Both the position numbers and the translations under genes were made by a program. Below the pieces are notes generated by a model. The model was not told the DNA's origin, made no database searches, and was given only the letters and a program-made list of their open reading frames with translations. A stretch of 64,000 nt of DNA, from positions 124,001-188,000 of IMG/VR virus record IMGVR_UViG_3300024239_000013; one strand, given 5' to 3'. The stretch's first letter is position 1; every line of letters begins with the position of its first letter. This document shows positions 25,149 to 51,952 of this stretch, one piece after another.

Positions 25149-25297
25149 ATTTTTATTTTTTTATAGATTCATTAAATTTACATGGGTATTGTTTCCTATC
25201 TGGCGTAGTTGTTTTTATTTTAAAGGTATTCTGATAGGTTTATTGCTGCTTTTGACATACTCCCACGGTTGAAACACGTGGGATTCTACTTTCAAAC

Positions 25298-26398
25298 CTA
25301 AACCGCCAACTGTATGTTGGTCTCACATTTAGTACGGTATAAGCGAATGCCCTCGCTTAGTATATTATTTGATGCTAATAAATCTCTTGAGTGTATTTCT
25401 CCACAACTCGAACAAGCCCACTCTCTATCAGAGAGCTTTAACTCTTTATTTACAACTCCACAAGTACAAGTTTTTGATGAAGCAAACCACCTATCAACTT
25501 TTTGAACTACTGTGTTGTACTTATTGGCTACCTGTTCTAATTTCAGAACAAAACTTGAAAAACTTAAATCGGAAACTTTTCTTCCCCAAATCTTCTTCAT
25601 ACCTTCTATGTTTAAATCTTCTAAAGCTATGAAAGAGTGGTTTTTACAAAGTTCATGAGCTAACTTCCACTCAAAATCATTCCTTTTATTTGATATATCA
25701 ATATGAGTTCTTTGAAGATTCTTTAAAGATTTCCTTCTATTTTTAGATCCCTTTTTCTTTTTCGAAAGTTGTCTGTTTAGAGATTTTATAGCTTTTAAAT
25801 TACTTTTGAAAAACTCTGGGGATTGTATTTCTTGCCCATTAGATATTGTTAGATATGTTTTTAAACCAAAATCTATTCCGATGGTAGTATCACCTACTCT
25901 TTCGTATTTTATTGGTTTTAAATCACAACAAAGTACAAAGAAAATCTCTCCAAGTTTGTTTCTCTTTACTACTATTCTTTTTATTTTTTCATATTCTCTT
26001 GATTTGCTAAATTTATATCTTCTTTTATTTATTGTTAAAATATTATCTTCTATTTTCCAACCGCTTTGTTTTAGTACAAAAGAATTGAAGTGTTTAGCTT
26101 TTTTAAACTTAGGAGGTCGTTTAGCTAAACCTTTAAAAAATCTTTTATAAGCTTCATCAACTCTTTGACATATCTCTTGTACAGACTGTGAATTAAGTTC
26201 TTTCCATTTTGGATTTTTATTTCTAAGTTTAGCAATATGTTTTTGGAGTCTGTTTACATTTATATAACCTCCATATAAACTATAATATCTTTTTTGAAGC
26301 GAAATACAATAATTCCAAATCCACGCAGAAGTAGATACACTCCTATGTAGGTGCTTTAGTTTCTTTGTTTTATATGCCTTGTATGAGAGGTTATACAT
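25298..26398 (-). CDS. tnpB: TnpB RNA-guided endonuclease
   Basis: RuvC GIDFG, ALEDL and RD..AS.NI; zinc finger SSKTC.C...C..C. Confidence 0.93.
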   Translation of the reverse strand: MYNLSYKAYKTKKLKHLHRSVSTSAWIWNYCISLQKRYYSLYGGYINVNRLQKHIAKLRNKNPKWKELNSQSVQEICQRVDEAYKRFFKGLAKRPPKFKKAKHFNSFVLKQSGWKIEDNILTINKRRYKFSKSREYEKIKRIVVKRNKLGEIFFVLCCDLKPIKYERVGDTTIGIDFGLKTYLTISNGQEIQSPEFFKSNLKAIKSLNRQLSKKKKGSKNRRKSLKNLQRTHIDISNKRNDFEWKLAHELCKNHSFIALEDLNIEGMKKIWGRKVSDLSFSSFVLKLEQVANKYNTVVQKVDRWFASSKTCTCGVVNKELKLSDREWACSSCGEIHSRDLLASNNILSEGIRLYRTKCETNIQLAV

Positions 26399-26801
26399 TC
26401 TTTTGGCCTTTTATATATTTTTTAACCGCTTCTTCTGAAATATGTCCAATACTTTCACAATAGTAGGAACGTGTCCATAGTGTAGGTATTCTACTTTTTA
26501 GTTTAGAAAATTCCTTTCTTAGAATCTTACTTGTATAACCCTTCAATTGTTGTACAATATAGTGGGGTGCTAACATTAGTTTAGCTTTGATAAATATATG
26601 TACGTGGTCTGGCATTACTTCTTGTATTGATATTTCACAACCTATTTCTTCTGCTTTCTCAACTAATAACGTCTTCAATCTATCTTCCCCTTCATTCACT
26701 AAAACTTTACGTCTGTATTTAGGACACCAAATAATATGGTATGCTATATTAAAAATAGTTGCATTACTATGTGTCCATCTTTCTGCATTATTCATTTTCA
26801 A
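26391..26801 (-). CDS. tnpA: Y1 HUH transposase
   Basis: YHIIWCPKYRR, PDHVH, LKG.TS, LW.RSYY and KKYI..Q. Confidence 0.93.
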   Translation of the reverse strand: MKMNNAERWTHSNATIFNIAYHIIWCPKYRRKVLVNEGEDRLKTLLVEKAEEIGCEISIQEVMPDHVHIFIKAKLMLAPHYIVQQLKGYTSKILRKEFSKLKSRIPTLWTRSYYCESIGHISEEAVKKYIKGQKNV

Positions 26802-42631: not shown

Positions 42632-42685
42632 TTCTATACTTTAGTTTAGATTATATATCCAAACTAAAGTACGAAATCGCGTCAG

Positions 42686-43158
42686 TGGAGACGGAGGGAA
42701 TCGAACCCTCGTCTTGATCAAATGTCCAATGGAATCATTCACAGGCTTAGATAATTTTTCTAAATTAACAAAATATGAAGTTTGATGTACGTGGGAAACA
42801 AAACTTCCAAAAAACCTGGTCGGCAACTAGTTATTTTATACAGGTCTGCCCCTGCCACCCGCACTCTTTCGCCCCCTGTATAGATCGACTACGATCAGAT
42901 GCTCAAGGTCAGCCTTGACTATTAAGGGAGCCATCTGGATTTTATTTTTCGTTTTTCTGTTTCTAGGTAAACGAATAACCACATGCTTAAGCAGCTACTG
43001 TGTAACTTACTTTAGAACTAGGAGTACCAAACGAGTTGATTACATCCCAAACATTTTTTTCGCCATTTAAAGCTTGTATAGGTTATTATAGAGTTTCCGA
43101 TACTAACTCTGCCTGCATCTCAAAGAACTGAATCTGTCAATCGAAACCGATCGTCCCC
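42686..43158 (-). ncRNA. ssrA: tmRNA, about 473 nt; tag GEKNVWDVINSFGTPSSKVSYTVAA at 42987-43064
   Basis: 5' GGGGACG pairs with 3' CGTCTCC-A including G3:U70; T-arm GAGGGTTCGATTCCCTC; tag ends AA-stop; CCA is not encoded. Confidence 0.93.
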
Positions 43159-44132: not shown

Positions 44133-44213
44133 TCTTATTATTTTTTAGATAATTTCTACATATTTATAGTACATTTTTTTAAAAAAAATTCATCATTACA
44201 TATAAAAATTAAT

Positions 44214-44249
44214 AAAAAAACCCTCTACTAAAATATAGTAGAGGGTTTT
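44214..44249 (-). terminator. Intrinsic terminator
   Basis: aaaaccctctacta/tagtagagggtttt followed by a T run on the minus strand. Confidence 0.85.
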
Positions 44250-44256
44250 ATTTTAC

Positions 44257-44404
44257 AGGATTGTTTTTGTGTGATATGTATAATATTTCTTAATTTGCTG
44301 TAACAATCCTTTAATTTACGGAATCCTTTTTTTATATTTGATCAATTTAAGAAATTGAACCTATGTCAGTATTAATTACTAATTTATTTTGCGGTAAAGA
44401 TTCC
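44257..44404 (-). ncRNA. Candidate tandem small structured RNAs (units 44320-44404 and 44257-44310)
   Basis: Each unit has a terminal stem (GGAATCTT/AGGATTCC; AGGATTGTT/AACAATCCT), the shared motif TTAC(C/A)GCAAA and a 3' GTAAA. The pair is bounded by TATATA and a terminator. Confidence 0.6.
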
Positions 44405-44427
44405 TTTATTTATATATTATATGTTTT

Positions 44428-44688
44428 TTATTCAGAAATGTTTCGATAATATTCGACATATTTATTTCTTATTTCTAAAGCTTTTCTAAAATAGCTAAAG
44501 TTTACTTTAGATGTAGAGAATATAGCATTGTGAAAATACTCTATTTCTTTATCTGTTGCTTTATTGCAGATAGTATCATATTCATTCAAAGTTACGTTAT
44601 AATAATGCAATATAGCATTATCTATAGCAGCATCTATATAGTCTTCCTTTCTTAGTGATTCTTTAACCTCAGGCCTTAATTTCTTCAT
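44428..44688 (-). CDS. Hypothetical protein
   Basis: 86 aa ORF overlapping the end of the upstream gene. Confidence 0.6.
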   Translation of the reverse strand: MKKLRPEVKESLRKEDYIDAAIDNAILHYYNVTLNEYDTICNKATDKEIEYFHNAIFSTSKVNFSYFRKALEIRNKYVEYYRNISE

Positions 44689-46090
44689 ATCTTGGAGAGT
44701 TTATTATTTCATACATAATACTCAAAGGTGTTATTTCTTTACCTCCTAATACAGATTTCATAATAGATGGGGAAAAACCAGATATTAAAGCGGTTCCAAG
44801 TTCATTAAATCTAACAGGAACGTTTCCTTCCCTACTTCTAACATTCCAAAATATGATGGAAGGAAGCTTATATCCGCTTTCCTCGTATTTAGACCTAATC
44901 ATCTCCATAGCAGAAAGACTTTTACCTTTAGATATTGCAATGTCAAATTCCATATCCGAAACGATAAGAATTTTAGAAGGCATAGCTTCATCAGGAACTT
45001 CATTTTTATTAGCTTGATCTAATATAACTGTAAAAACTTTCTCTAAGTTAGTATTCATACCCCACTCAGAATAGATCATCTGTTCATACCTTTCTTTTAA
45101 AGAACCTGAAACTTTTTCCAATTTAGGACTTTCAGAAAAAGTGATAAAACAATCTTTGAATGGTCCATTATTTCTTTCAGAGATATAAAGACCTAAAGAA
45201 ACCGCAACGTCCATGCACGTTAAATTACCACTTCCATTAATCTTAGCTTCCATTGAACCCGAAACATCTACTAAAGGAAGTATCATATCATTAGATCCCT
45301 CTAAATAATTAGGAAGTGATTTCCATTGTTCATTAGCTACCTCGAATACACCTTTACTTAATGATTTTATAACATCATATGGGTACACTGCACCAGCATT
45401 AATCTTAACAGTTCTTTCCTCTGGTGATTTTGTTAACTCAGCAATATATTCATCATACCTTTCACTATCATTTTTCTTAAAAGAAGCTTGATATCTAGCA
45501 GCTGCGACTGAAGGTATCTTAGAATATTCTATTTCGTTGAATTTTTTAGAACACATTTTTTGTTCAACAACTTCGGTATTTTCTACTAGAAGTTTTCTAT
45601 ATTCTTTTGGAGTTAATTTTAAATGTTTTCTTAATGAATTTGCAACCTTTCCTTTTCTTGGCATCCATTTAGCACAAAGTTTATTTCCCGAATAAAGAGC
45701 ATCTTTAATTAAGTCGAATGCCTTAACTTCAACTTTTGTTCCTTCGAAATTAAGTAAATCGTCCCATCTACCATATTCAGGAATGAATTTTAGATTCTTA
45801 GATATTGTAACCGGATGATTATCTGCAAGATAAGAAGTGCATAATCTAAAAACTCTTCTTTCTCCAGCACCTTCTCTTATATCTCTAGCCCAGAACAATA
45901 TCTTAAGTGCCTCTTCCGGAGATTCATTGAATGCTAAAGAGAATTCTCTAACTACTGAACTCTCGTCACTAGATCTCATAGAACCGATAGAGAAGAAAAG
46001 ATCTACTACTCTCTTAAGCGATGATGAGTTTGTCACCATACCATTTAAAGTTAAAGAGTTTTTTTGCTGTAAAGAAGAAATTAAATCCAT
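44669..46090 (-). CDS. DUF2828-type TROVE/Ro60-like protein with C-terminal vWA domain
   Basis: RDIREGAGER, YGRWDDL, AKWMPR; MIDAS DVSGSM, TN, SDMEFD and FWN. Confidence 0.8.
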   Translation of the reverse strand: MDLISSLQQKNSLTLNGMVTNSSSLKRVVDLFFSIGSMRSSDESSVVREFSLAFNESPEEALKILFWARDIREGAGERRVFRLCTSYLADNHPVTISKNLKFIPEYGRWDDLLNFEGTKVEVKAFDLIKDALYSGNKLCAKWMPRKGKVANSLRKHLKLTPKEYRKLLVENTEVVEQKMCSKKFNEIEYSKIPSVAAARYQASFKKNDSERYDEYIAELTKSPEERTVKINAGAVYPYDVIKSLSKGVFEVANEQWKSLPNYLEGSNDMILPLVDVSGSMEAKINGSGNLTCMDVAVSLGLYISERNNGPFKDCFITFSESPKLEKVSGSLKERYEQMIYSEWGMNTNLEKVFTVILDQANKNEVPDEAMPSKILIVSDMEFDIAISKGKSLSAMEMIRSKYEESGYKLPSIIFWNVRSREGNVPVRFNELGTALISGFSPSIMKSVLGGKEITPLSIMYEIINSPRYEEIKA

Positions 46091-47120: not shown

Positions 47121-48567
47121 ATTCTATTCCTGCATGAGGTTCACCTTTAGCTTTAGCTACCTGGTATTTATTTGTTGGCTCCTCACTTATAACAAAAGCT
47201 TTATGTGGATTAACTATTAAACCTGCTTTTCTCATAAAAGCTCTGTTTGCTAAGAATGGTGTACTTTTATCTGTTCTGTCATTCGGAGAAACCCTAACTT
47301 TGGGTATGGTTACACCATCTATAGTAACATTCAATTCTATCATTGGCCTTGTGTGAATGTGTTTACCTACTTCTGCATCAGAATAACCAACTATATCATT
47401 TACAAATTTTTTATCCCCAACCCTCCATATCAGTTTATTTCCTTTTTCTTCTACCTCGTCTGCATGAATAGTGCAAGATTTTGCACCATTACCAGTATCA
47501 AATTTAGCTACCATCTTACCAATTCCAGGAAGACTTATACTTTCTAGGTATCCTATTTCTAGAGATGAATAAGCCCAATTTTCTTTGTCTAAGATATAAT
47601 CTAATACATCATCAACTATCGGTTTACCTATTGCTTTAGATATACCTTCAGTTCCTGGAGAAGAGTTGACTTCTAGAATATATGGTTTTTTGGTTTTTTC
47701 GTCAATCATTATATCAACCCCACACCAGTGACATCCAACTGCGTTAGCTGCTTTACAAGCTATATCAACTAGTTCTTCTGGAATTTCAAAATTAGAAACC
47801 TTTCCACCTAAAGAATAGTTTGTTCTGAAGTCTTTTTCCACCGCTTCTCTTTTCATAGAACCTAGTATTATGCAATTGTCATCAGATTGTTTAAGCGGGT
47901 CAAATTTCTTAACTATAACTTGTATTCTAAGATCAGATTTTGAATTGATTTTTTCTTGTATTAATATCTCGTTAGTTTCGTCCAGTTTTCTGATTGTTTG
48001 ATAAACTGATTTTAGAGATGCGTAAGAATCAACTATAGAAACTCCAATTCCTTGTGTTCCTGAAAGAAGTTTCATAATGATAGGGAATTTTCCTCCTACT
48101 GCTTCTAGTGCCTTATCTAGATAATCCTCATTAGGGACTAATGAATATTTAGGAACAGGTAGACCATTTTCTTCCATTATCTGAGAAGTTATAAATTTAT
48201 TTTCACAAACTTCCATGGATTCTAACGTATTTACAGTGAAGTATCTAGCTTCTTCTAGAGAAAGCAAGATCTGTTTAGTGTGAGAATTTTCTAAAACTCC
48301 TCTTCTTGGAACTATTACTGTTGAATTAGGTTCTATTAGAATCTGCTCTTCTTCAGTTTTTATGAGGTGTCCATTATAAACCTTTTCTAATGTTGCATCA
48401 TTAACATCTACAATGTGACATTCTACTCCTCTTTTTTTACACTCTTCCATAAAAGAGGCAGACGTTTTACTCCCCTTAACATTTCCTGTTAATACTATAA
48501 CCTTGGTAGTTTCAGATTTAGCTTCGTTTAAAAAGGAGAAAAAATTAAGTATCTTCTTATTTGACAT
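47110..48567 (-). CDS. RimK-like ATP-grasp ligase fused to a retropepsin-like (RimK-associated) protease domain
   Basis: G.QG.GV, FRTN.SLGG, GVD, LEVNSSPG; AKFDTG. Confidence 0.88.
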   Translation of the reverse strand: MSNKKILNFFSFLNEAKSETTKVIVLTGNVKGSKTSASFMEECKKRGVECHIVDVNDATLEKVYNGHLIKTEEEQILIEPNSTVIVPRRGVLENSHTKQILLSLEEARYFTVNTLESMEVCENKFITSQIMEENGLPVPKYSLVPNEDYLDKALEAVGGKFPIIMKLLSGTQGIGVSIVDSYASLKSVYQTIRKLDETNEILIQEKINSKSDLRIQVIVKKFDPLKQSDDNCIILGSMKREAVEKDFRTNYSLGGKVSNFEIPEELVDIACKAANAVGCHWCGVDIMIDEKTKKPYILEVNSSPGTEGISKAIGKPIVDDVLDYILDKENWAYSSLEIGYLESISLPGIGKMVAKFDTGNGAKSCTIHADEVEEKGNKLIWRVGDKKFVNDIVGYSDAEVGKHIHTRPMIELNVTIDGVTIPKVRVSPNDRTDKSTPFLANRAFMRKAGLIVNPHKAFVISEEPTNKYQVAKAKGEPHAGIEFEK

Positions 48568-48633
48568 CAAATTTCTTATTATTTTATCAGTGTATATATC
48601 AATATCGCTTTAAGTGTTTGTGTGAAATTAATA

Positions 48634-48942: not shown

Positions 48943-49120
48943 TTTTTATTTCTCTTATTTTTAAGTATAATGATGTTATGTATTCCACAGATTCATAGGA
49001 ACCTGATAGTGAATCTGACTTACCTATCACATCATTTAAAAATTCTTCGTCACTTTTGTATTTTTTTCTTCTCTCTAGAAGAACTTTCAATTCCGGTAAA
49101 TATCTATTATTAAATCCCAT
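48920..49120 (-). CDS. Hypothetical protein
   Basis: MGFNNRY; translationally coupled to the polymerase gene. Confidence 0.6.
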   Translation of the reverse strand: MGFNNRYLPELKVLLERRKKYKSDEEFLNDVIGKSDSLSGSYESVEYITSLYLKIREIKNEVINRK

Positions 49121-50268
49121 TAGAATAAAGCATTAATCATGAAAAGATTTGGACTTATTTTATTATATCCCATAACTTCAATAAATCTATTAATAGGATC
49201 CAAAATAGTCTTTGTGAATTGTTCATCATAATCTATAGGAGGAGCAAACTCATATGGGAATGTTCCTTGTGGATATGCAAATACATTATTATCAGTAGCT
49301 GATTTGACCTTAACAAAATAATAATTAACCTTCTCCCCGCTTCTAATTAAAGAATACTTACTCTTATATTTAGAAGAGTTCAATAGATAGTTGTGATACC
49401 CCGATGCTCTAACATGTATTGGGCAAGCTTTTGCAACCTCAAATCCTGTAGTATCATTTAATATGAATTTTTCGTAATTATTGATATTAACAGAAGCTGA
49501 TATATTTTTAGGTTCTTGTACCTTGAATTCTTTTTTAATTGTCTTTAGCTCTCTAACAAATTCCCTGATATCAAAATTTCTACCTTTTGAGAAGATAAAC
49601 TTTGTTAAATAAACTAGTTTTTCTCTAACAAAAGGTGGAGTACCTCCTTTTATCATTTCAACTCCAGTAAACTTTAACTGAGAAAGAGGTTCTGTATGTA
49701 TACCGGAATCGTAAGATAAATTGGCAACGTATTTCTTTTTACCCAGGAATATTGCATTAAATGACAAAGTCTCTAATTCGAAATCTTGGTAATTGTCAGT
49801 GTTCCATTTCTTGGAATATATTTCGAAGCATTTCTTTAGATATTCATTGAGTCTATATTTATTAATATCTAGGATTAAATCTTTTGCTTCCCCTGGATAG
49901 TCACAAGAATCTACAACTTCCTGGAATGTAACATAATTAGAATCCGTATCTCCATAGATAACTAAAGGATTATTAACCTTTTTGACTTTAGTGATACCTA
50001 GCTTTTCGTGTAATTCTGTATCAAGATGCCAATGGTCATGGAAATACTTATGTAATATTTTTTCTGAGTATTTTATAAGGTCTTGACCCTGGAGTGTAAC
50101 TGCTTCAGCAACGTCGGGATTGAAACATACAAACCAGTTATTACCAATCGCACCATAGATAGAGTTCATAGTTAATTTTATAGCTTGCTCCTCGTTTTTA
50201 AGCTCGTTTTTCAGTGAAGTAAGCTGCTCTATCTTATTCTCAATCTCTATTCTTTCTTCTTCTGTCAT
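49120..50268 (-). CDS. Family B DNA polymerase, C-terminal subunit (split gene)
   Basis: Starts in the fingers domain; KLTMNSIYG, YGDTDS, KKKY and G.E; no exonuclease domain or motif A. Confidence 0.9.
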   Translation of the reverse strand: MTEEERIEIENKIEQLTSLKNELKNEEQAIKLTMNSIYGAIGNNWFVCFNPDVAEAVTLQGQDLIKYSEKILHKYFHDHWHLDTELHEKLGITKVKKVNNPLVIYGDTDSNYVTFQEVVDSCDYPGEAKDLILDINKYRLNEYLKKCFEIYSKKWNTDNYQDFELETLSFNAIFLGKKKYVANLSYDSGIHTEPLSQLKFTGVEMIKGGTPPFVREKLVYLTKFIFSKGRNFDIREFVRELKTIKKEFKVQEPKNISASVNINNYEKFILNDTTGFEVAKACPIHVRASGYHNYLLNSSKYKSKYSLIRSGEKVNYYFVKVKSATDNNVFAYPQGTFPYEFAPPIDYDEQFTKTILDPINRFIEVMGYNKISPNLFMINALF

Positions 50269-50377
50269 GTTAATTAGAAATTATGTAATTTATATGAAGT
50301 AAAAAATATTTGTTCCGAAATTTTTATATATTTTCCAACTATATATATGGTGTTATTAACTACGAAAATATACTTAA

Positions 50378-51952
50378 ATGACAATAAATGATTTTATAAA
50401 TAGCTCCGGAAGAGTTTCTTCTACCAAAAGTAATGAAAAATGGGTATCTAAGAATTTTCCTGAAGATTTTGAAAAAATTAAGAACCATACGAAAAAAATA
50501 GGACTTATTCCAATTTCATTTTCAGAAGAAATATACCATTATATAAATAATTTAAAAAAACCATACGTTTGTAAAGAATGCGGAATAAATAAACCTAAAT
50601 TTAATGGTCTATTGAATGGTTATCAAGAATATTGCTCTTCTAAATGTTCCAATTCTTCAAAGGACGTTAAAAATAAAAAGAAGATCTCCTATGTAAAAAA
50701 ATATGGAGTTGATAATCCTTCGAAATCAAAAGTAGTCATAGAAAAAATTCAAGAAACTTTCAATTCAAAATATGGAGGTAATCCATTAAAATTAGAATCA
50801 TTTAGAAAAAAAATAGAAGAGACAAATATTGAAAGATATGGCGAAAAATCTCCAATGAAAAGGGGAAGCTTAATAAGAGAGAAAATAGAAGAAAGAAAAA
50901 TTTCTGATTTTTTGAAAAAATATGAGCATCTAGAAATAATAGATTTCGAAAACAATAAAAATGGGGAAGTTATAATAAAATGTCAAAAATGTCAAAATGA
51001 ATTCTCAATAAGTAAGTGGAATTTACATCAAAGAAATAAATTTAACGTAAAAGGTGATATATGTACAATCTGTAATCCTATAGGAAACATAACGGAATCC
51101 AAAATAGAATTATTCATAGAGGATTTTCTAATTGAATCTAATCTAAAATACGATAAGAATAACAGAAAGATAATCTCAGGAAAAGAAATAGACTTCTATG
51201 TGCCAGAAGCTAAAATTGGTATAGAGGTAAATGGATTATTTTGGCATTCTGATAAATTTAAGGAAAGCTATTATCATCTAAATAAAACCAAGGAAGCAGA
51301 AAGTAAGGGTATTCTATTAATTCACATTTTTGAAGACGAGATCTTATATAAACCAGAAACGGTTAAATCTAGACTCAGATCCATATTTGGATTAAATGAA
51401 AATAGAATATTTGCAAGAAATTGTAAAATAAAAGAAATATCAAAAAAGGAATCAGGTAAGTTCATGAAGGAGAATCATTTACAGGGGAACGCAGGATGCA
51501 ACGTTTCTTTTGGATTATATTATAATGAAAATCTAGTTTCAGTAATGACCTTCGGAGGTCTTAGAAAAAGTTTAGGATCTAATAATAAGAATGGACATTG
51601 GGAACTTATAAGATTTTGTAATAAGTCTAATACTAGTGTGATCGGAGGTGCGTCCAAGTTATTTAATAAATTCATAGAAAAATACAAACCAGAAAATGTA
51701 ATATCATACTGCGACAGAAGATGGTCAAATGGAGATTTTTATACAAAAATAGGATTTACGCTTGATTCTGAAACAAAACCCAACTATTACTACTTTAAAA
51801 ACGGTATAAGAGAATCCAGATTTAAATATAGAAAGGACGTTTTAGTTAAAATGGGATTTTCTCCAGATAAAAGTGAATCTGAAATTATGCTAGATAGAGG
51901 ATATATGAGAATATATGATTGTGGTAGTTATAAGTTCAAATGGATTTTTTAA
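50378..51952 (+). CDS. Free-standing homing endonuclease (Hef-like; zinc finger, KYG repeats, PD-(D/E)xK)
   Basis: C..C/CS..C, KYGVDNP repeats, EIDFY..IEVNG..WH, ELIRFC..GGASKL and SYCDRRW. Confidence 0.75.
   Translation: MTINDFINSSGRVSSTKSNEKWVSKNFPEDFEKIKNHTKKIGLIPISFSEEIYHYINNLKKPYVCKECGINKPKFNGLLNGYQEYCSSKCSNSSKDVKNKKKISYVKKYGVDNPSKSKVVIEKIQETFNSKYGGNPLKLESFRKKIEETNIERYGEKSPMKRGSLIREKIEERKISDFLKKYEHLEIIDFENNKNGEVIIKCQKCQNEFSISKWNLHQRNKFNVKGDICTICNPIGNITESKIELFIEDFLIESNLKYDKNNRKIISGKEIDFYVPEAKIGIEVNGLFWHSDKFKESYYHLNKTKEAESKGILLIHIFEDEILYKPETVKSRLRSIFGLNENRIFARNCKIKEISKKESGKFMKENHLQGNAGCNVSFGLYYNENLVSVMTFGGLRKSLGSNNKNGHWELIRFCNKSNTSVIGGASKLFNKFIEKYKPENVISYCDRRWSNGDFYTKIGFTLDSETKPNYYYFKNGIRESRFKYRKDVLVKMGFSPDKSESEIMLDRGYMRIYDCGSYKFKWIF

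What the first reader, a model, noticed from the sequence alone, without database searches (positions are those of the whole stretch)
44214..46090. Tandem Y-RNA-like small RNAs near a TROVE/vWA (DUF2828-type) gene
Seen: a 290-bp gap without an ORF contains, on the minus strand, AATATATA, then unit 1 (85 nt), unit 2 (54 nt) and a strong terminator. Both units follow TAAAGGA-stem-TTAC(C/A)GCAAA-variable AT-rich loop-stem'-GTAAA. The stems differ in sequence but both keep their pairing, a covariation-like pattern, and unit 1 has an extra internal hairpin (TCAATTT/AAATTGA). Established: Ro60/TROVE-vWA proteins bind Y RNAs through a terminal stem and are often encoded beside them. Inference: this is a phage Ro-like ribonucleoprotein with its own processed small RNAs, lying about 1 kb from the tmRNA. 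The units do not match the canonical Y RNA sequence.
Basis: partly seen in the sequence, partly recalled or inferred. Interest (0 to 1): 0.82.

Follow-up and report, generated by a model that had tools for sequence, protein, structure and literature searches.

The report
Phage Ro-like protein with partner RNAs
Two small structured RNAs next to a phage gene for a Ro60-shaped protein belong to a large RNA family, absent from Rfam 15, that accompanies this gene in very diverse phages and closely resembles the unexplained "Class I" RNAs of social amoebae.

Summary
On the minus strand, downstream of a DUF2828/DUF7788 gene (46090..44669), lie two units and a strong terminator. Each unit is a 6-bp terminal stem, 3 nt, a CAGCAA box (CCGCAA in unit 1), a variable A-rich loop, the 3' stem arm and a (U)GU tail.

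This is a conserved RNA family. A covariance model found it on the gene's strand next to the gene in 72 of 79 related viral loci. There were no opposite-strand hits in 597 kb. It recurred in an independent set of MAG contigs. It also occurs in cultured phages of Listeria, Staphylococcus, Enterococcus, Bacillus, Mycobacterium, Campylobacter, Salmonella, Cronobacter, Sinorhizobium, Synechococcus and Fusobacterium. More than 20 different stem sequences all pair.

In many phages one unit carries a permuted tRNA-like module, as bacterial YrlA Y RNAs do. The predicted protein fold matches Ro60 over its full length. The "phage Ro-like RNP" reading is therefore well supported genetically, but binding and transcripts remain untested.

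The Ro-binding motif of known Y RNAs (GNCGAA/CGAA) is absent and CAGCAA takes its place. The only Rfam family that recognises the units is the Dictyostelium Class I RNA, with 9 sub-threshold hits, all exactly on units. This suggests an unexpected link.

The parts
44669..46090 (-). Gene for a 473-aa DUF2828 + DUF7788 protein. It has a Ro60-like fold (helical ring plus vWA domain) and an intact MIDAS motif (D275-x-S277-x-S279, T347, D379).
   Evidence: Pfam E 2e-33 and 1e-50. PHROG 850 'RNA-binding protein', E 3e-149. AF2 model pLDDT 79.9. The top three Foldseek PDB hits are Ro60/TROVE over the full length. Invariant residues come from alignment A1.
44416..44423 (-). CATATAAT, a -10-like box (TATAAT) about 12 nt before the stem of unit 1. 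It is a possible promoter for the two-unit transcript. No -35 element is present.
   Evidence: The block CATATAA / TATATAA is conserved at the same place in 5 of 6 relatives (alignment A7). The sigma-70 scan, which requires a -35, did not call it. The promoter role is an inference.
44320..44404 (-). Unit 1 (85 nt): a terminal stem of 7-9 bp, the box TTACCGCAA (44397..44389, deviant CCGCAA core), a loop with an internal hairpin (44358..44342), the 3' arm GGATTCC and the tail GT.
   Evidence: Sequence, fold, pattern search. Model R1 gives only 14.2 bits, E 0.15, with an alternative pairing, because of the long insert. Orthologous long units with a canonical CAGCAA and a covarying internal hairpin occur in relatives L008-L012.
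44255..44311 (-). Unit 2 (57 nt): AAG, 6-bp stem GGATTG/CAATCC, TTA, CAGCAA box (44300..44295), an unstructured A-rich loop and the tail TGT.
   Evidence: Fold z = -3.3. R1 48.6 bits and R2 56.2 bits; the unit is itself a seed sequence. Rfam RF01414 Dictyostelium Class I RNA 23.3 bits, aligned over the full model.
44210..44249 (-). Intrinsic terminator ending the two-unit transcript.
   Evidence: A 14-bp stem with 5 G-C pairs, then a T run. Relatives have a different terminator hairpin at the same place.

Best explanation
The locus encodes a phage ribonucleoprotein of the Ro60/Y-RNA kind, built from a divergent protein family and a previously undefined RNA family.

The protein belongs to DUF2828 + DUF7788. 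It is predicted to fold as a helical ring with a vWA/MIDAS domain, like Ro60.

The two units are its partner RNAs. The likely route is as follows. The units are transcribed together, either from a -10-like box just upstream or by read-through from the protein gene, and end at the strong terminator. The transcript is then cut into an about 85-nt RNA and an about 57-nt RNA. In each RNA the 5' and 3' ends pair into a 6-bp stem, and next to that stem lies the single-stranded box (U)UA-CAGCAA.

The stem plus box, together with the conserved first G-C pair and the 3' (U)G(U) tail, would be the protein's recognition module. This module would replace the GNCGAA/CGAA module of known bacterial and phage Y RNAs. 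The variable loop is the effector part. In many other phages it carries a tRNA-like T-arm / acceptor-like / D-arm module, as in YrlA. In this phage it is reduced to one hairpin (unit 1) or nothing (unit 2, YrlB-like).

By analogy with Rsr/Y RNA, the particle probably acts on host or phage RNA turnover or non-coding RNA quality control during infection. Examples would be tethering or blocking an exoribonuclease such as PNPase, or surveillance of tRNA or tmRNA.

Shown here: the RNA family, its covariation, its genetic linkage and strand bias, and the protein fold.

Inferred: binding, processing, the promoter and the cellular function.
For: Linkage:
- R1 gave 90 hits at E<=1 in 85 loci (597 kb, both strands searched). 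All were on the gene strand, and 80 had E<0.01.
- 72 of 79 IMG/VR loci have a unit about 14-680 nt after the gene.
- In an independent set of 18 MAG contigs, R2 gave 19 hits, all on the gene strand, in 11 loci.
- A whole-genome scan of Salmonella phage BPS15Q2 (89.8 kb) returned E<0.01 hits only 0.3-0.6 kb after its DUF2828 gene.
- The 64-kb window has no other credible hit.

Structure:
- All 6 stem pairs show compensatory changes, and more than 20 different stem sequences were seen.
- A test not biased by seed choice: 41% of gene-strand CAGCAA boxes have a 6-bp stem ending exactly 3 nt upstream. The figure is about 11% at displaced offsets and 12.5% on the other strand.
- In a natural variant strain, 14 of the 16 gap letters in 3.7 kb fall in the two loops, while the stems and boxes stay intact.

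Breadth: units were found beside the gene in phages of Campylobacter, Cronobacter, Salmonella, Listeria, Mycobacterium, Bacillus, Staphylococcus, Enterococcus, Fusobacterium, Sinorhizobium and Synechococcus.

Y-RNA character: long units hold T-arm, acceptor-like and D-arm hairpins inside the same stem-plus-box frame. This is the arrangement described for YrlA (PMC4201824).

Protein: Foldseek against the PDB gave 9kop at E 4.6e-10 and TM 0.61, then 9l5y, then 1yvr, and nothing else below E 1e-2.

Independent wet-lab hints (PMC12282133): the Listeria phage CKA15 homologue (CKA15_055) matches Rsr by HHpred and is found in virions. Abundant unannotated RNAs are transcribed within 2 kb upstream of it in the same direction. 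Three units lie in that phage's unannotated gap directly upstream of the gene.
Against: - No transcript evidence exists for the units of this phage. Metatranscriptome contigs cover the tmRNA and parts of the gene but not 44214..44410. Contigs are also poorly suited to 55-85-nt RNAs.
- There are no binding data.
- By sequence the protein does not hit Pfam TROVE, nor any PDB chain significantly. The Ro60 relationship rests on a predicted fold with TM about 0.6.
- The recognised Ro-binding motif of Y RNAs is absent.
- Unit 1 of this phage carries CCGCAA in an otherwise invariant box and scores poorly with the models.
- In a few phages the units lie 2-2.7 kb from the gene (Sinorhizobium phiM12) or within tRNA arrays. 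Linkage to the 'RNA gene module' rather than to the protein itself is therefore not excluded.
- Seven of 79 related loci gave no hit.
Confidence: 0.75

Rival explanations
1. The units are cis-acting elements of the DUF2828 operon mRNA, such as processing, stability or translational-operator sites. They would not be free-standing small RNAs, and the protein may bind them only to regulate its own expression.
For: In the window they sit in the 3' part of the operon and no full sigma-70 promoter is called. In Vibrio phage nt-1 a unit-like element holds the ribosome-binding site in its loop and the start codon in its 3' arm (L003:2453-2500, R2 E 0.008). Synechococcus phage B23 has two units immediately before the start codon.
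Against: Position is not fixed. The units lie upstream, downstream, 2-2.7 kb away, or interleaved with tRNA genes in one array. There are one to six copies per locus. Many copies carry a tRNA-like module typical of stable Y RNAs. A conserved -10-like box and a dedicated terminator flank the pair in this clade.
Confidence: 0.12
2. The units are stand-alone phage small RNAs that belong to the tRNA/tmRNA gene module. They could be tRNA-processing by-products, decoys for host nucleases or regulators acting through their loops. Their neighbourhood with DUF2828 would reflect co-location, not a physical partnership.
For: The gene and the units usually sit beside tRNA arrays, or here a tmRNA. In Salmonella phage BPS15Q2 the units are interspersed with tRNAs. 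The loops vary freely.
Against: All 80 loci fetched by protein similarity alone from IMG/VR were tested, and 72 of 79 carry a unit on the gene strand, whether or not tRNAs were seen nearby. The protein has the fold of the one protein family known to use end-paired, gene-adjacent small RNAs with tRNA-like modules.
Confidence: 0.1
3. The two units are a chance similarity in AT-rich intergenic DNA.
For: RNAfold for unit 1 alone is not better than shuffles (z = -0.9). TTACNGCAA occurs 4 times in the window against 1.3 expected, which is only marginal.
Against: All the comparative results.
Confidence: 0.01

Closest known systems
Bacterial and phage Ro60 (Rsr) with Y RNAs YrlA/YrlB (Chen et al. 2014, PMC4201824; Thermus phage phiLo Ro60 with Yrl1/Yrl2, PMC12135203)
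   Same: A ring-plus-vWA protein fold. Small RNAs encoded within a few hundred nt to a few kb of the gene on the same strand, often two or more per locus. The 5' and 3' ends pair into a stem. A short conserved single-stranded or bulged motif lies on the 5' side of that stem. In many loci one RNA carries a T-arm / acceptor-like / D-arm tRNA mimic, plus a shorter RNA without it.
   Different: The protein family is DUF2828/DUF7788, with no Pfam TROVE hit at E<0.1 in any of 9 homologues tested. The conserved RNA motif is (U)UA-CAGCAA placed 3 nt after a plain 6-bp stem, not GNCGAA(N)G / CGAA in a bulged helix. This window's RNAs lack the tRNA-like module. The family is far more widespread in phages: 711 phage records hold the gene, against the 22 phages reported in 2014. 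Giant viruses of protists carry homologues with the same predicted fold, judged by Foldseek; their sequences were not tested here.
Dictyostelid Class I RNAs (Rfam RF01414; Kjellin et al. 2021, PMC7919456)
   Same: About 60 nt. A 6-bp stem joins the 5' and 3' ends, with sequence free but pairing kept and the first G-C pair conserved. The conserved motif CCUUACAGCAA lies directly 3' of the 5' arm and is unpaired. Its dictyostelid-universal positions C6, C9, A10 and A11 all fall in the phage-invariant CAGCAA. The rest of the RNA is variable and unstructured. It starts with AAG and ends with C-UGU; window unit 2 reads AAG...C-UGU. RF01414 is the only Rfam family that hits the units. It gave 9 hits of 23.3-32.4 bits over the full model length, every one exactly on a unit and none elsewhere in about 118 kb.
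   Different: All hits are below Rfam's gathering score (41.5). The spacer between stem and CAGCAA is one nt shorter. The phage RNAs are clustered next to a protein gene, whereas Class I genes are dispersed, probably Pol III genes with a DUSE promoter. GC content is lower (25% against 32-41%). The known direct binder of Class I RNA is an RRM protein (Rnp1A). Whether dictyostelids encode a DUF2828 protein could not be checked here.
Putative Y RNAs of Listeria phage CKA15 (PMC12282133, 2025)
   Same: The same protein family: CKA15_055 is the counterpart of the LMTA-34 DUF2828 gene, and their flanking DNA is 97.7% identical. The authors noted the HHpred match to Rsr and guessed that abundant upstream RNAs might be Y RNAs.
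   Different: That paper defined no RNA motif, structure, boundaries or family. The region it highlights (26,236-26,727) maps to a ROOL-like RNA, not to the units. The units defined here lie at 25,287-25,554 of that genome.

Membership tests
Ro60/TROVE-Y RNA ribonucleoprotein | Protein with a HEAT-repeat ring (TROVE) followed by a vWA domain with a MIDAS motif | tested here: met
   By predicted fold only. Foldseek top hits are 9kop, 9l5y and 1yvr, aligned over the full length with TM 0.57-0.62 and E 5e-10 to 7e-7. The MIDAS residues are invariant in A1.
Ro60/TROVE-Y RNA ribonucleoprotein | Sequence membership in Pfam TROVE (PF05731) | tested here: not met
   No TROVE hit for the window protein or for 8 homologues. 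All are DUF2828 + DUF7788. A profile search against PDB sequences gave TROVE chains only at E 0.63.
Ro60/TROVE-Y RNA ribonucleoprotein | Small RNAs encoded near the gene on the same strand, with the 5' and 3' ends paired | tested here: met
Ro60/TROVE-Y RNA ribonucleoprotein | Conserved Ro-binding motif (metazoan GGUCCGA bulged helix; bacterial or phage GNCGAA(N)G / CGAA) | tested here: not met
   The units carry (U)UA-CAGCAA instead. There is no Rfam Y RNA hit even at E<=10.
Ro60/TROVE-Y RNA ribonucleoprotein | At least one RNA per locus with a tRNA-like (T / acceptor / D) domain (YrlA type) | tested here: inconclusive
   Met in Salmonella, Mycobacterium, Cronobacter, Sinorhizobium, Bacillus and Enterococcus phages. 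Not met in the window, where unit 1 has only one hairpin. In relatives that hairpin looks like a remnant T-arm, for example in L010.
Ro60/TROVE-Y RNA ribonucleoprotein | Physical binding of the RNA by the protein | not testable with these tools
   Needs RIP/CLIP, EMSA or a structure of the complex.
Dictyostelid Class I RNA (RF01414) | Score at or above the Rfam gathering threshold (41.5 bits) | tested here: not met
   Unit 2 scores 23.3 bits, and the best phage unit scores 32.4 bits.
Dictyostelid Class I RNA (RF01414) | 42-65 nt, a 6-bp terminal stem with a conserved 5' G, and an unpaired 11-nt motif next to the 5' arm | tested here: met
   Unit 2: 57 nt, stem GGAUUG/CAAUCC, and UUACAGCAA identical to 9 of the 11 motif positions. 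The features are as defined in PMC7919456. Unit 1 is longer (85 nt) and has CCGCAA.
Dictyostelid Class I RNA (RF01414) | Conserved ends AAG... and ...CUGU | tested here: met
   Unit 2 reads AAG-G...C-UGU. Across the phage family the tail is C-(U/A)G(N).
Dictyostelid Class I RNA (RF01414) | Dispersed eukaryotic genes with a DUSE promoter about 60 nt upstream, restricted to Dictyostelia | tested here: not met
   The units are phage-encoded, clustered beside a protein gene and followed by a bacterial-type terminator.

The most novel reading that the evidence does not exclude
The CAGCAA-box RNAs and the dictyostelid Class I RNAs may be one RNA family, or at least one recognition solution. If so, Class I RNAs would be the Y-RNA-like partners of a DUF2828/Ro-like protein in social amoebae, possibly acquired from a virus.

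Proteins with the same predicted fold, some named DUF2828 or DUF7788, occur in giant viruses of protists. Plants also have DUF2828 proteins. One of the four proteins pulled down with Class I RNA DdR-21, DDB_G0281243, has no known function and is conserved in all Dictyostelia. It is the obvious candidate.

This would give a biochemical handle on Class I RNAs, which are reported as unique to Dictyostelia and have no known mechanism. It would also define a second, virus-rich branch of Ro/Y-RNA biology.
Probability: 0.3. Interest if true: 0.92.

Novelty: new variant of a known kind. Interest (0 to 1): 0.85.

Why it matters
Ro60/Y-RNA particles are known from animals, about 5% of bacteria and a handful of phages. 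This locus points to a much larger, sequence-divergent branch.

- A DUF family annotated only as 'RNA-binding protein' in hundreds of phage genomes gains a defined RNA partner with a simple, mutable recognition module (a 6-bp stem plus CAGCAA). These genomes include biocontrol and therapy phages such as Felix O1-like, P100/A511-like, Staphylococcus and Campylobacter phages.
- That makes the function of the family directly testable in cultivable systems.
- It corrects annotations, for example tiny ORFs and 'tRNA-OTHER' calls placed over or next to these RNAs.
- It offers a concrete, cheaply testable hypothesis for the long-unexplained Class I RNAs of Dictyostelium.

Tried and rejected
- ARAGORN found no tRNA or tmRNA in the window. 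Rfam shows that it missed the tmRNA.
- Rfam at gathering thresholds gave nothing on the units.
- A profile of the protein family against PDB sequences gave no significant TROVE hit. Only the fold comparison shows the relationship.
- The sigma-70 promoter scan found fewer sites than in shuffles and none before unit 1.
- The third TTACAGCAA, inside the ORF start, was tested as a possible autoregulatory site and rejected: 0 of 75 homologues have it.
- The 86-aa ORF between the gene and the units was tested as a possible conserved partner and rejected. It has no homologue in any locus and no Pfam or PHROG hit.
- The R2 hit at 48566..48632 has no CAGCAA and is spurious.
- Neighbouring genes are replication-type genes. 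No RNA-repair genes lie nearby.
- Read laying used assembled contigs only and could neither show nor exclude the small RNAs.
- Attempts to learn whether Dictyostelium has a DUF2828 protein failed:
  - literature searches for DUF2828, PF11443 and DDB_G0281243 gave nothing useful;
  - Avesson 2011 and Aspegren 2004 are not held;
  - motif searches in the truncated proteome files supplied with Kjellin 2021 were inconclusive;
  - the protein atlas lists only viral clusters.
- A direct Rfam scan of the cka15 locus did not reproduce the ROOL hit seen in the 97.7% identical LMTA-34 locus. This is unresolved.
Full report
WHAT IS THERE. All features are on the minus strand. The window holds a 473-aa ORF (46090..44669) that matches Pfam DUF2828 and DUF7788 and PHROG 850 'RNA-binding protein'. 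An overlapping 86-aa ORF follows (44688..44428), then 295 nt without an ORF. That stretch contains two units and a strong terminator. Unit 1 (44404..44320, 85 nt) has the stem GGAATC/GATTCC, extendable to 8-9 bp, the box TTACCGCAA, an internal hairpin and the tail GT. Unit 2 (44311..44255) reads AAG-GATTG-TTA-CAGCAA, then an A-rich loop, then CAATC-C-TGT. The terminator has a 14-bp stem (44249..44217) followed by a T run. RNAfold recovers both terminal stems and leaves the box unpaired. A tmRNA lies 1.06 kb further on (43158..42683; Rfam 78.8 bits), although ARAGORN missed it.

IT IS A CONSERVED RNA FAMILY LINKED TO THE GENE. The window is part of IMG/VR contig UViG_3300024239_000013 (319 kb). 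The gene has homologues in 711 phage records from many host groups. The first distant locus inspected was Campylobacter phage NCTC12673. It showed two units of the same design between a tRNA array and the gene, with different stems (TGGTAC/GTACCA and GGGTAT/ATACCC) and the box ACAGCAAA.

A pattern scan followed, and then two covariance models generalised the result. R1 was built from 28 short units and R2 from 35 units of wider origin.
- R1 gave 90 hits at E<=1 in 597 kb searched on both strands. Every hit was on the gene's strand.
- 72 of 79 IMG/VR loci that had been fetched by protein similarity alone have a hit at E<0.01, about 14-680 nt after the gene.
- In an independent collection (18 MAG contigs, none used as a seed), R2 gave 19 hits, all on the gene strand.
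- A scan of a complete 89.8-kb Felix O1-like genome returned significant hits only 0.3-0.6 kb after its DUF2828 gene, one of them not a seed.
- The 64-kb window has no other credible hit.
- Cultured phages of Listeria, Staphylococcus, Enterococcus, Bacillus, Mycobacterium, Salmonella, Cronobacter, Sinorhizobium, Synechococcus and Fusobacterium carry one to six units each, upstream or downstream of the gene and often among tRNA genes.

STRUCTURE AND CONSTRAINT. The invariant core is CAGCAA. It is preceded by three nucleotides (mostly UUA, UAA or AUU) and then by the 5' arm. The 3' arm is followed by (U/A)G(N). All six stem pairs show compensatory changes, and more than 20 different stem sequences were seen.

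The seeds were chosen for pairing, so I ran an unbiased test. Among all CAGCAA occurrences on the gene strand, 41% have a 6-bp partner whose 5' arm ends exactly 3 nt upstream. The figure is about 11% for displaced registers and 12.5% on the other strand. The box itself is 2.8 times more frequent on the gene strand.

In the window's own clade (proteins 64-66% identical), the two-unit arrangement is conserved. This covers the two stems, the boxes, a TATAA(T/A) block about 12 nt before unit 1, and a terminator. The loops diverge freely, and the internal hairpin of unit 1 changes sequence but stays a hairpin. A near-identical strain seen in a wastewater run differs in this region only inside the loops, where 14 of the 16 gap letters in 3.7 kb are found. 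Unit 1 of this phage is unusual in having CCGCAA. Its orthologues have CAGCAA.

THE PROTEIN IS RO60-LIKE. An AlphaFold2 model from a 31-sequence alignment (pLDDT 79.9) has as its only strong PDB matches the Ro60 of Thermus phage phiLo (9kop and 9l5y; TM about 0.6) and Xenopus Ro (1yvr). All three align over the full length. The vWA MIDAS residues are invariant. By sequence the family is distinct. There is no Pfam TROVE hit in nine members and no significant hit to PDB sequences.

THE RNAS ARE Y-RNA-LIKE, WITH A DIFFERENT RECOGNITION MODULE. In Salmonella, Mycobacterium, Cronobacter, Sinorhizobium, Bacillus and Enterococcus phages, one unit per locus is 120-140 nt long. Inside the same stem-plus-box frame it holds a T-arm (GGUUCGAnUCC), a hairpin in the acceptor position and a D-arm-like hairpin. 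This is the permuted tRNA mimic that defines bacterial YrlA (PMC4201824). The short units correspond to YrlB-type RNAs. However, the motif held to bind Ro60 in bacteria and phages is absent: GNCGAA(N)G, or CGAA in phage phiLo. CAGCAA occupies the equivalent position. The phages in which Y RNAs were reported earlier carry TROVE-annotated Ro60, for example mycobacteriophage ET08. The DUF2828 branch has not been described. In the held library, DUF2828 appears in only five papers, four on plants and one on tardigrade genome contamination. The nearest prior statement is a 2025 multi-omics paper on Listeria phage CKA15. Its authors noted an HHpred match of CKA15_055 to Rsr, found the protein in virions, and guessed that abundant upstream RNAs might be Y RNAs, without defining them. 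I located three units in that genome at 25,287-25,554, in the unannotated gap directly before CKA15_055.

THE DICTYOSTELIUM RESEMBLANCE. At relaxed thresholds the only Rfam family that recognises the units is RF01414, the Class I RNA of Dictyostelium. It gave nine hits of 23.3-32.4 bits, each over the whole model and each exactly on a unit. There were no RF01414 hits anywhere else in about 118 kb. All are below the gathering score of 41.5, so the units are not members by Rfam's criterion.

The match of design is nevertheless detailed (PMC7919456):
- a length of about 60 nt;
- a 6-bp stem joining the ends, with free sequence, conserved pairing and a conserved 5' G;
- an unpaired 11-nt motif CCUUACAGCAA next to the 5' arm, whose universally conserved positions fall inside the phage-invariant CAGCAA;
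- a variable remainder;
- a start of AAG and an end of CUGU, which is how window unit 2 starts and ends.

Class I RNAs are reported as unique to Dictyostelia and have no known mechanism. Their pull-down partners were GuaB, NdkC, Rnp1A and DDB_G0281243, a protein of unknown function. I could not determine whether dictyostelids encode a DUF2828 protein. Proteins with the same predicted fold, some named DUF2828 or DUF7788, do occur in giant viruses of protists, and plants also have DUF2828 proteins. Homology and convergence both remain open.

EXPRESSION. Only assembled contigs of metatranscriptomes were available. They cover the tmRNA of a close relative (a 421-nt contig) and pieces of the DUF2828 gene, but not the units. 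This neither supports nor refutes small-RNA production. No sigma-70 promoter with a -35 element precedes unit 1. The conserved TATAAT-like box (44421..44416) is a candidate promoter by inference only.

MOST LIKELY MECHANISM. The Ro60-shaped protein binds the terminal stem plus the CAGCAA box of its own phage-encoded RNAs. The RNA loops act as adaptors or gates. They are tRNA-like in many phages and minimal here. By analogy with Rsr, Y RNA and PNPase, the particle would redirect or restrain host RNA decay, or supervise structured non-coding RNAs (tRNAs, tmRNA) during infection. The frequent placement beside tRNA or tmRNA genes and the virion association of the Listeria homologue fit an early, RNA-centred role. 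None of this was tested here.

VERDICT. The finding is a real, widespread RNA family that is absent from Rfam 15 and from the literature I could search, paired with a Ro60-fold DUF family. It is best filed as a new variant of the Ro60/Y-RNA kind. It carries an unexpected and testable link to dictyostelid Class I RNAs.

Noticed in passing
window 42683-43158 (minus strand): A tmRNA gene (Rfam 78.8 bits, full length, with large insertions) that ARAGORN did not report. Related phages have one in the same relative position (L010 5799-6291, L012 6749-7240). A 421-nt metatranscriptome contig of a close relative covers it.
   Followed up: partly
L005 964-1515 (Listeria phage LMTA-34); cka15 record OR088597.1 about 26,236-26,727: A ROOL RNA match (88.5 bits, just under the gathering score of 99.1). 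By 97.7% identity it maps onto the region that PMC12282133 reports as by far the most transcribed part of phage CKA15 (small ORFs CKA15_059-061, up to 67% of phage reads) and leaves unexplained. A direct Rfam scan of the cka15 locus did not list ROOL, so this is unresolved.
   Followed up: partly
L003 2453-2500 (Vibrio phage nt-1): A unit-like element in the leader of the DUF2828 mRNA. It has the stem GACATT/AATGTC and the box ACAGCAA, with the ribosome-binding site in the loop and the start codon inside the 3' arm (R2 E 0.008). It may be an autoregulatory operator.
   Followed up: no
L089 1267-1394 (Bacillus phage PBC2): One unit appears to enclose a complete tRNA-Ile-like sequence in its loop. 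The tRNA reads correctly on the gene strand, although the record lists this tRNA array on the opposite strand.
   Followed up: no
L090 4500-4712 (Staphylococcus phage S-CoN_Ph10); L113 2957-3224 (Listeria phage cka15): In the Staphylococcus phage, tiny annotated 'hypothetical protein' ORFs (CDS0142, CDS0141) lie over three CAGCAA-box units and are probably not genes. In cka15 the three units lie in an unannotated gap.
   Followed up: partly
L002 4357-4599 (Cronobacter phage S13); L087 4869-4978 (Synechococcus phage B23): Over-long 'tRNA-Ser', 'tRNA-OTHER' or 'tRNA-Undet' features of 110-121 nt lie next to the DUF2828 gene and its units. Rfam aligns the two Cronobacter features (121 nt and 113 nt) to the tRNA model end to end, which implies internal insertions. 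The Synechococcus feature was not scanned. They may be intron-containing tRNAs or tRNA-like RNAs.
   Followed up: no
homologues of window 44669-46090: The protein seems to be a virion component in some phages. CKA15_055 was found in purified particles (20 peptides, 57% coverage; PMC12282133). The homologues in Salmonella phage 7t3 and Pectobacterium phage CBB are annotated 'structural protein'.
   Followed up: no
window 44285-44366, seen in run X3: A closely related strain from wastewater differs here by one substitution and four indels, including a 10-nt insertion after 44289. All changes are in the loops of the two units.
   Followed up: yes
window 49120-51952: A DNA polymerase B fragment ORF (49120-50268, minus strand) lies next to an opposite-strand ORF with Vsr-endonuclease and Mom-like domains (50378-51952). 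This suggests a split polymerase gene interrupted by a mobile or modification-related gene.
   Followed up: no
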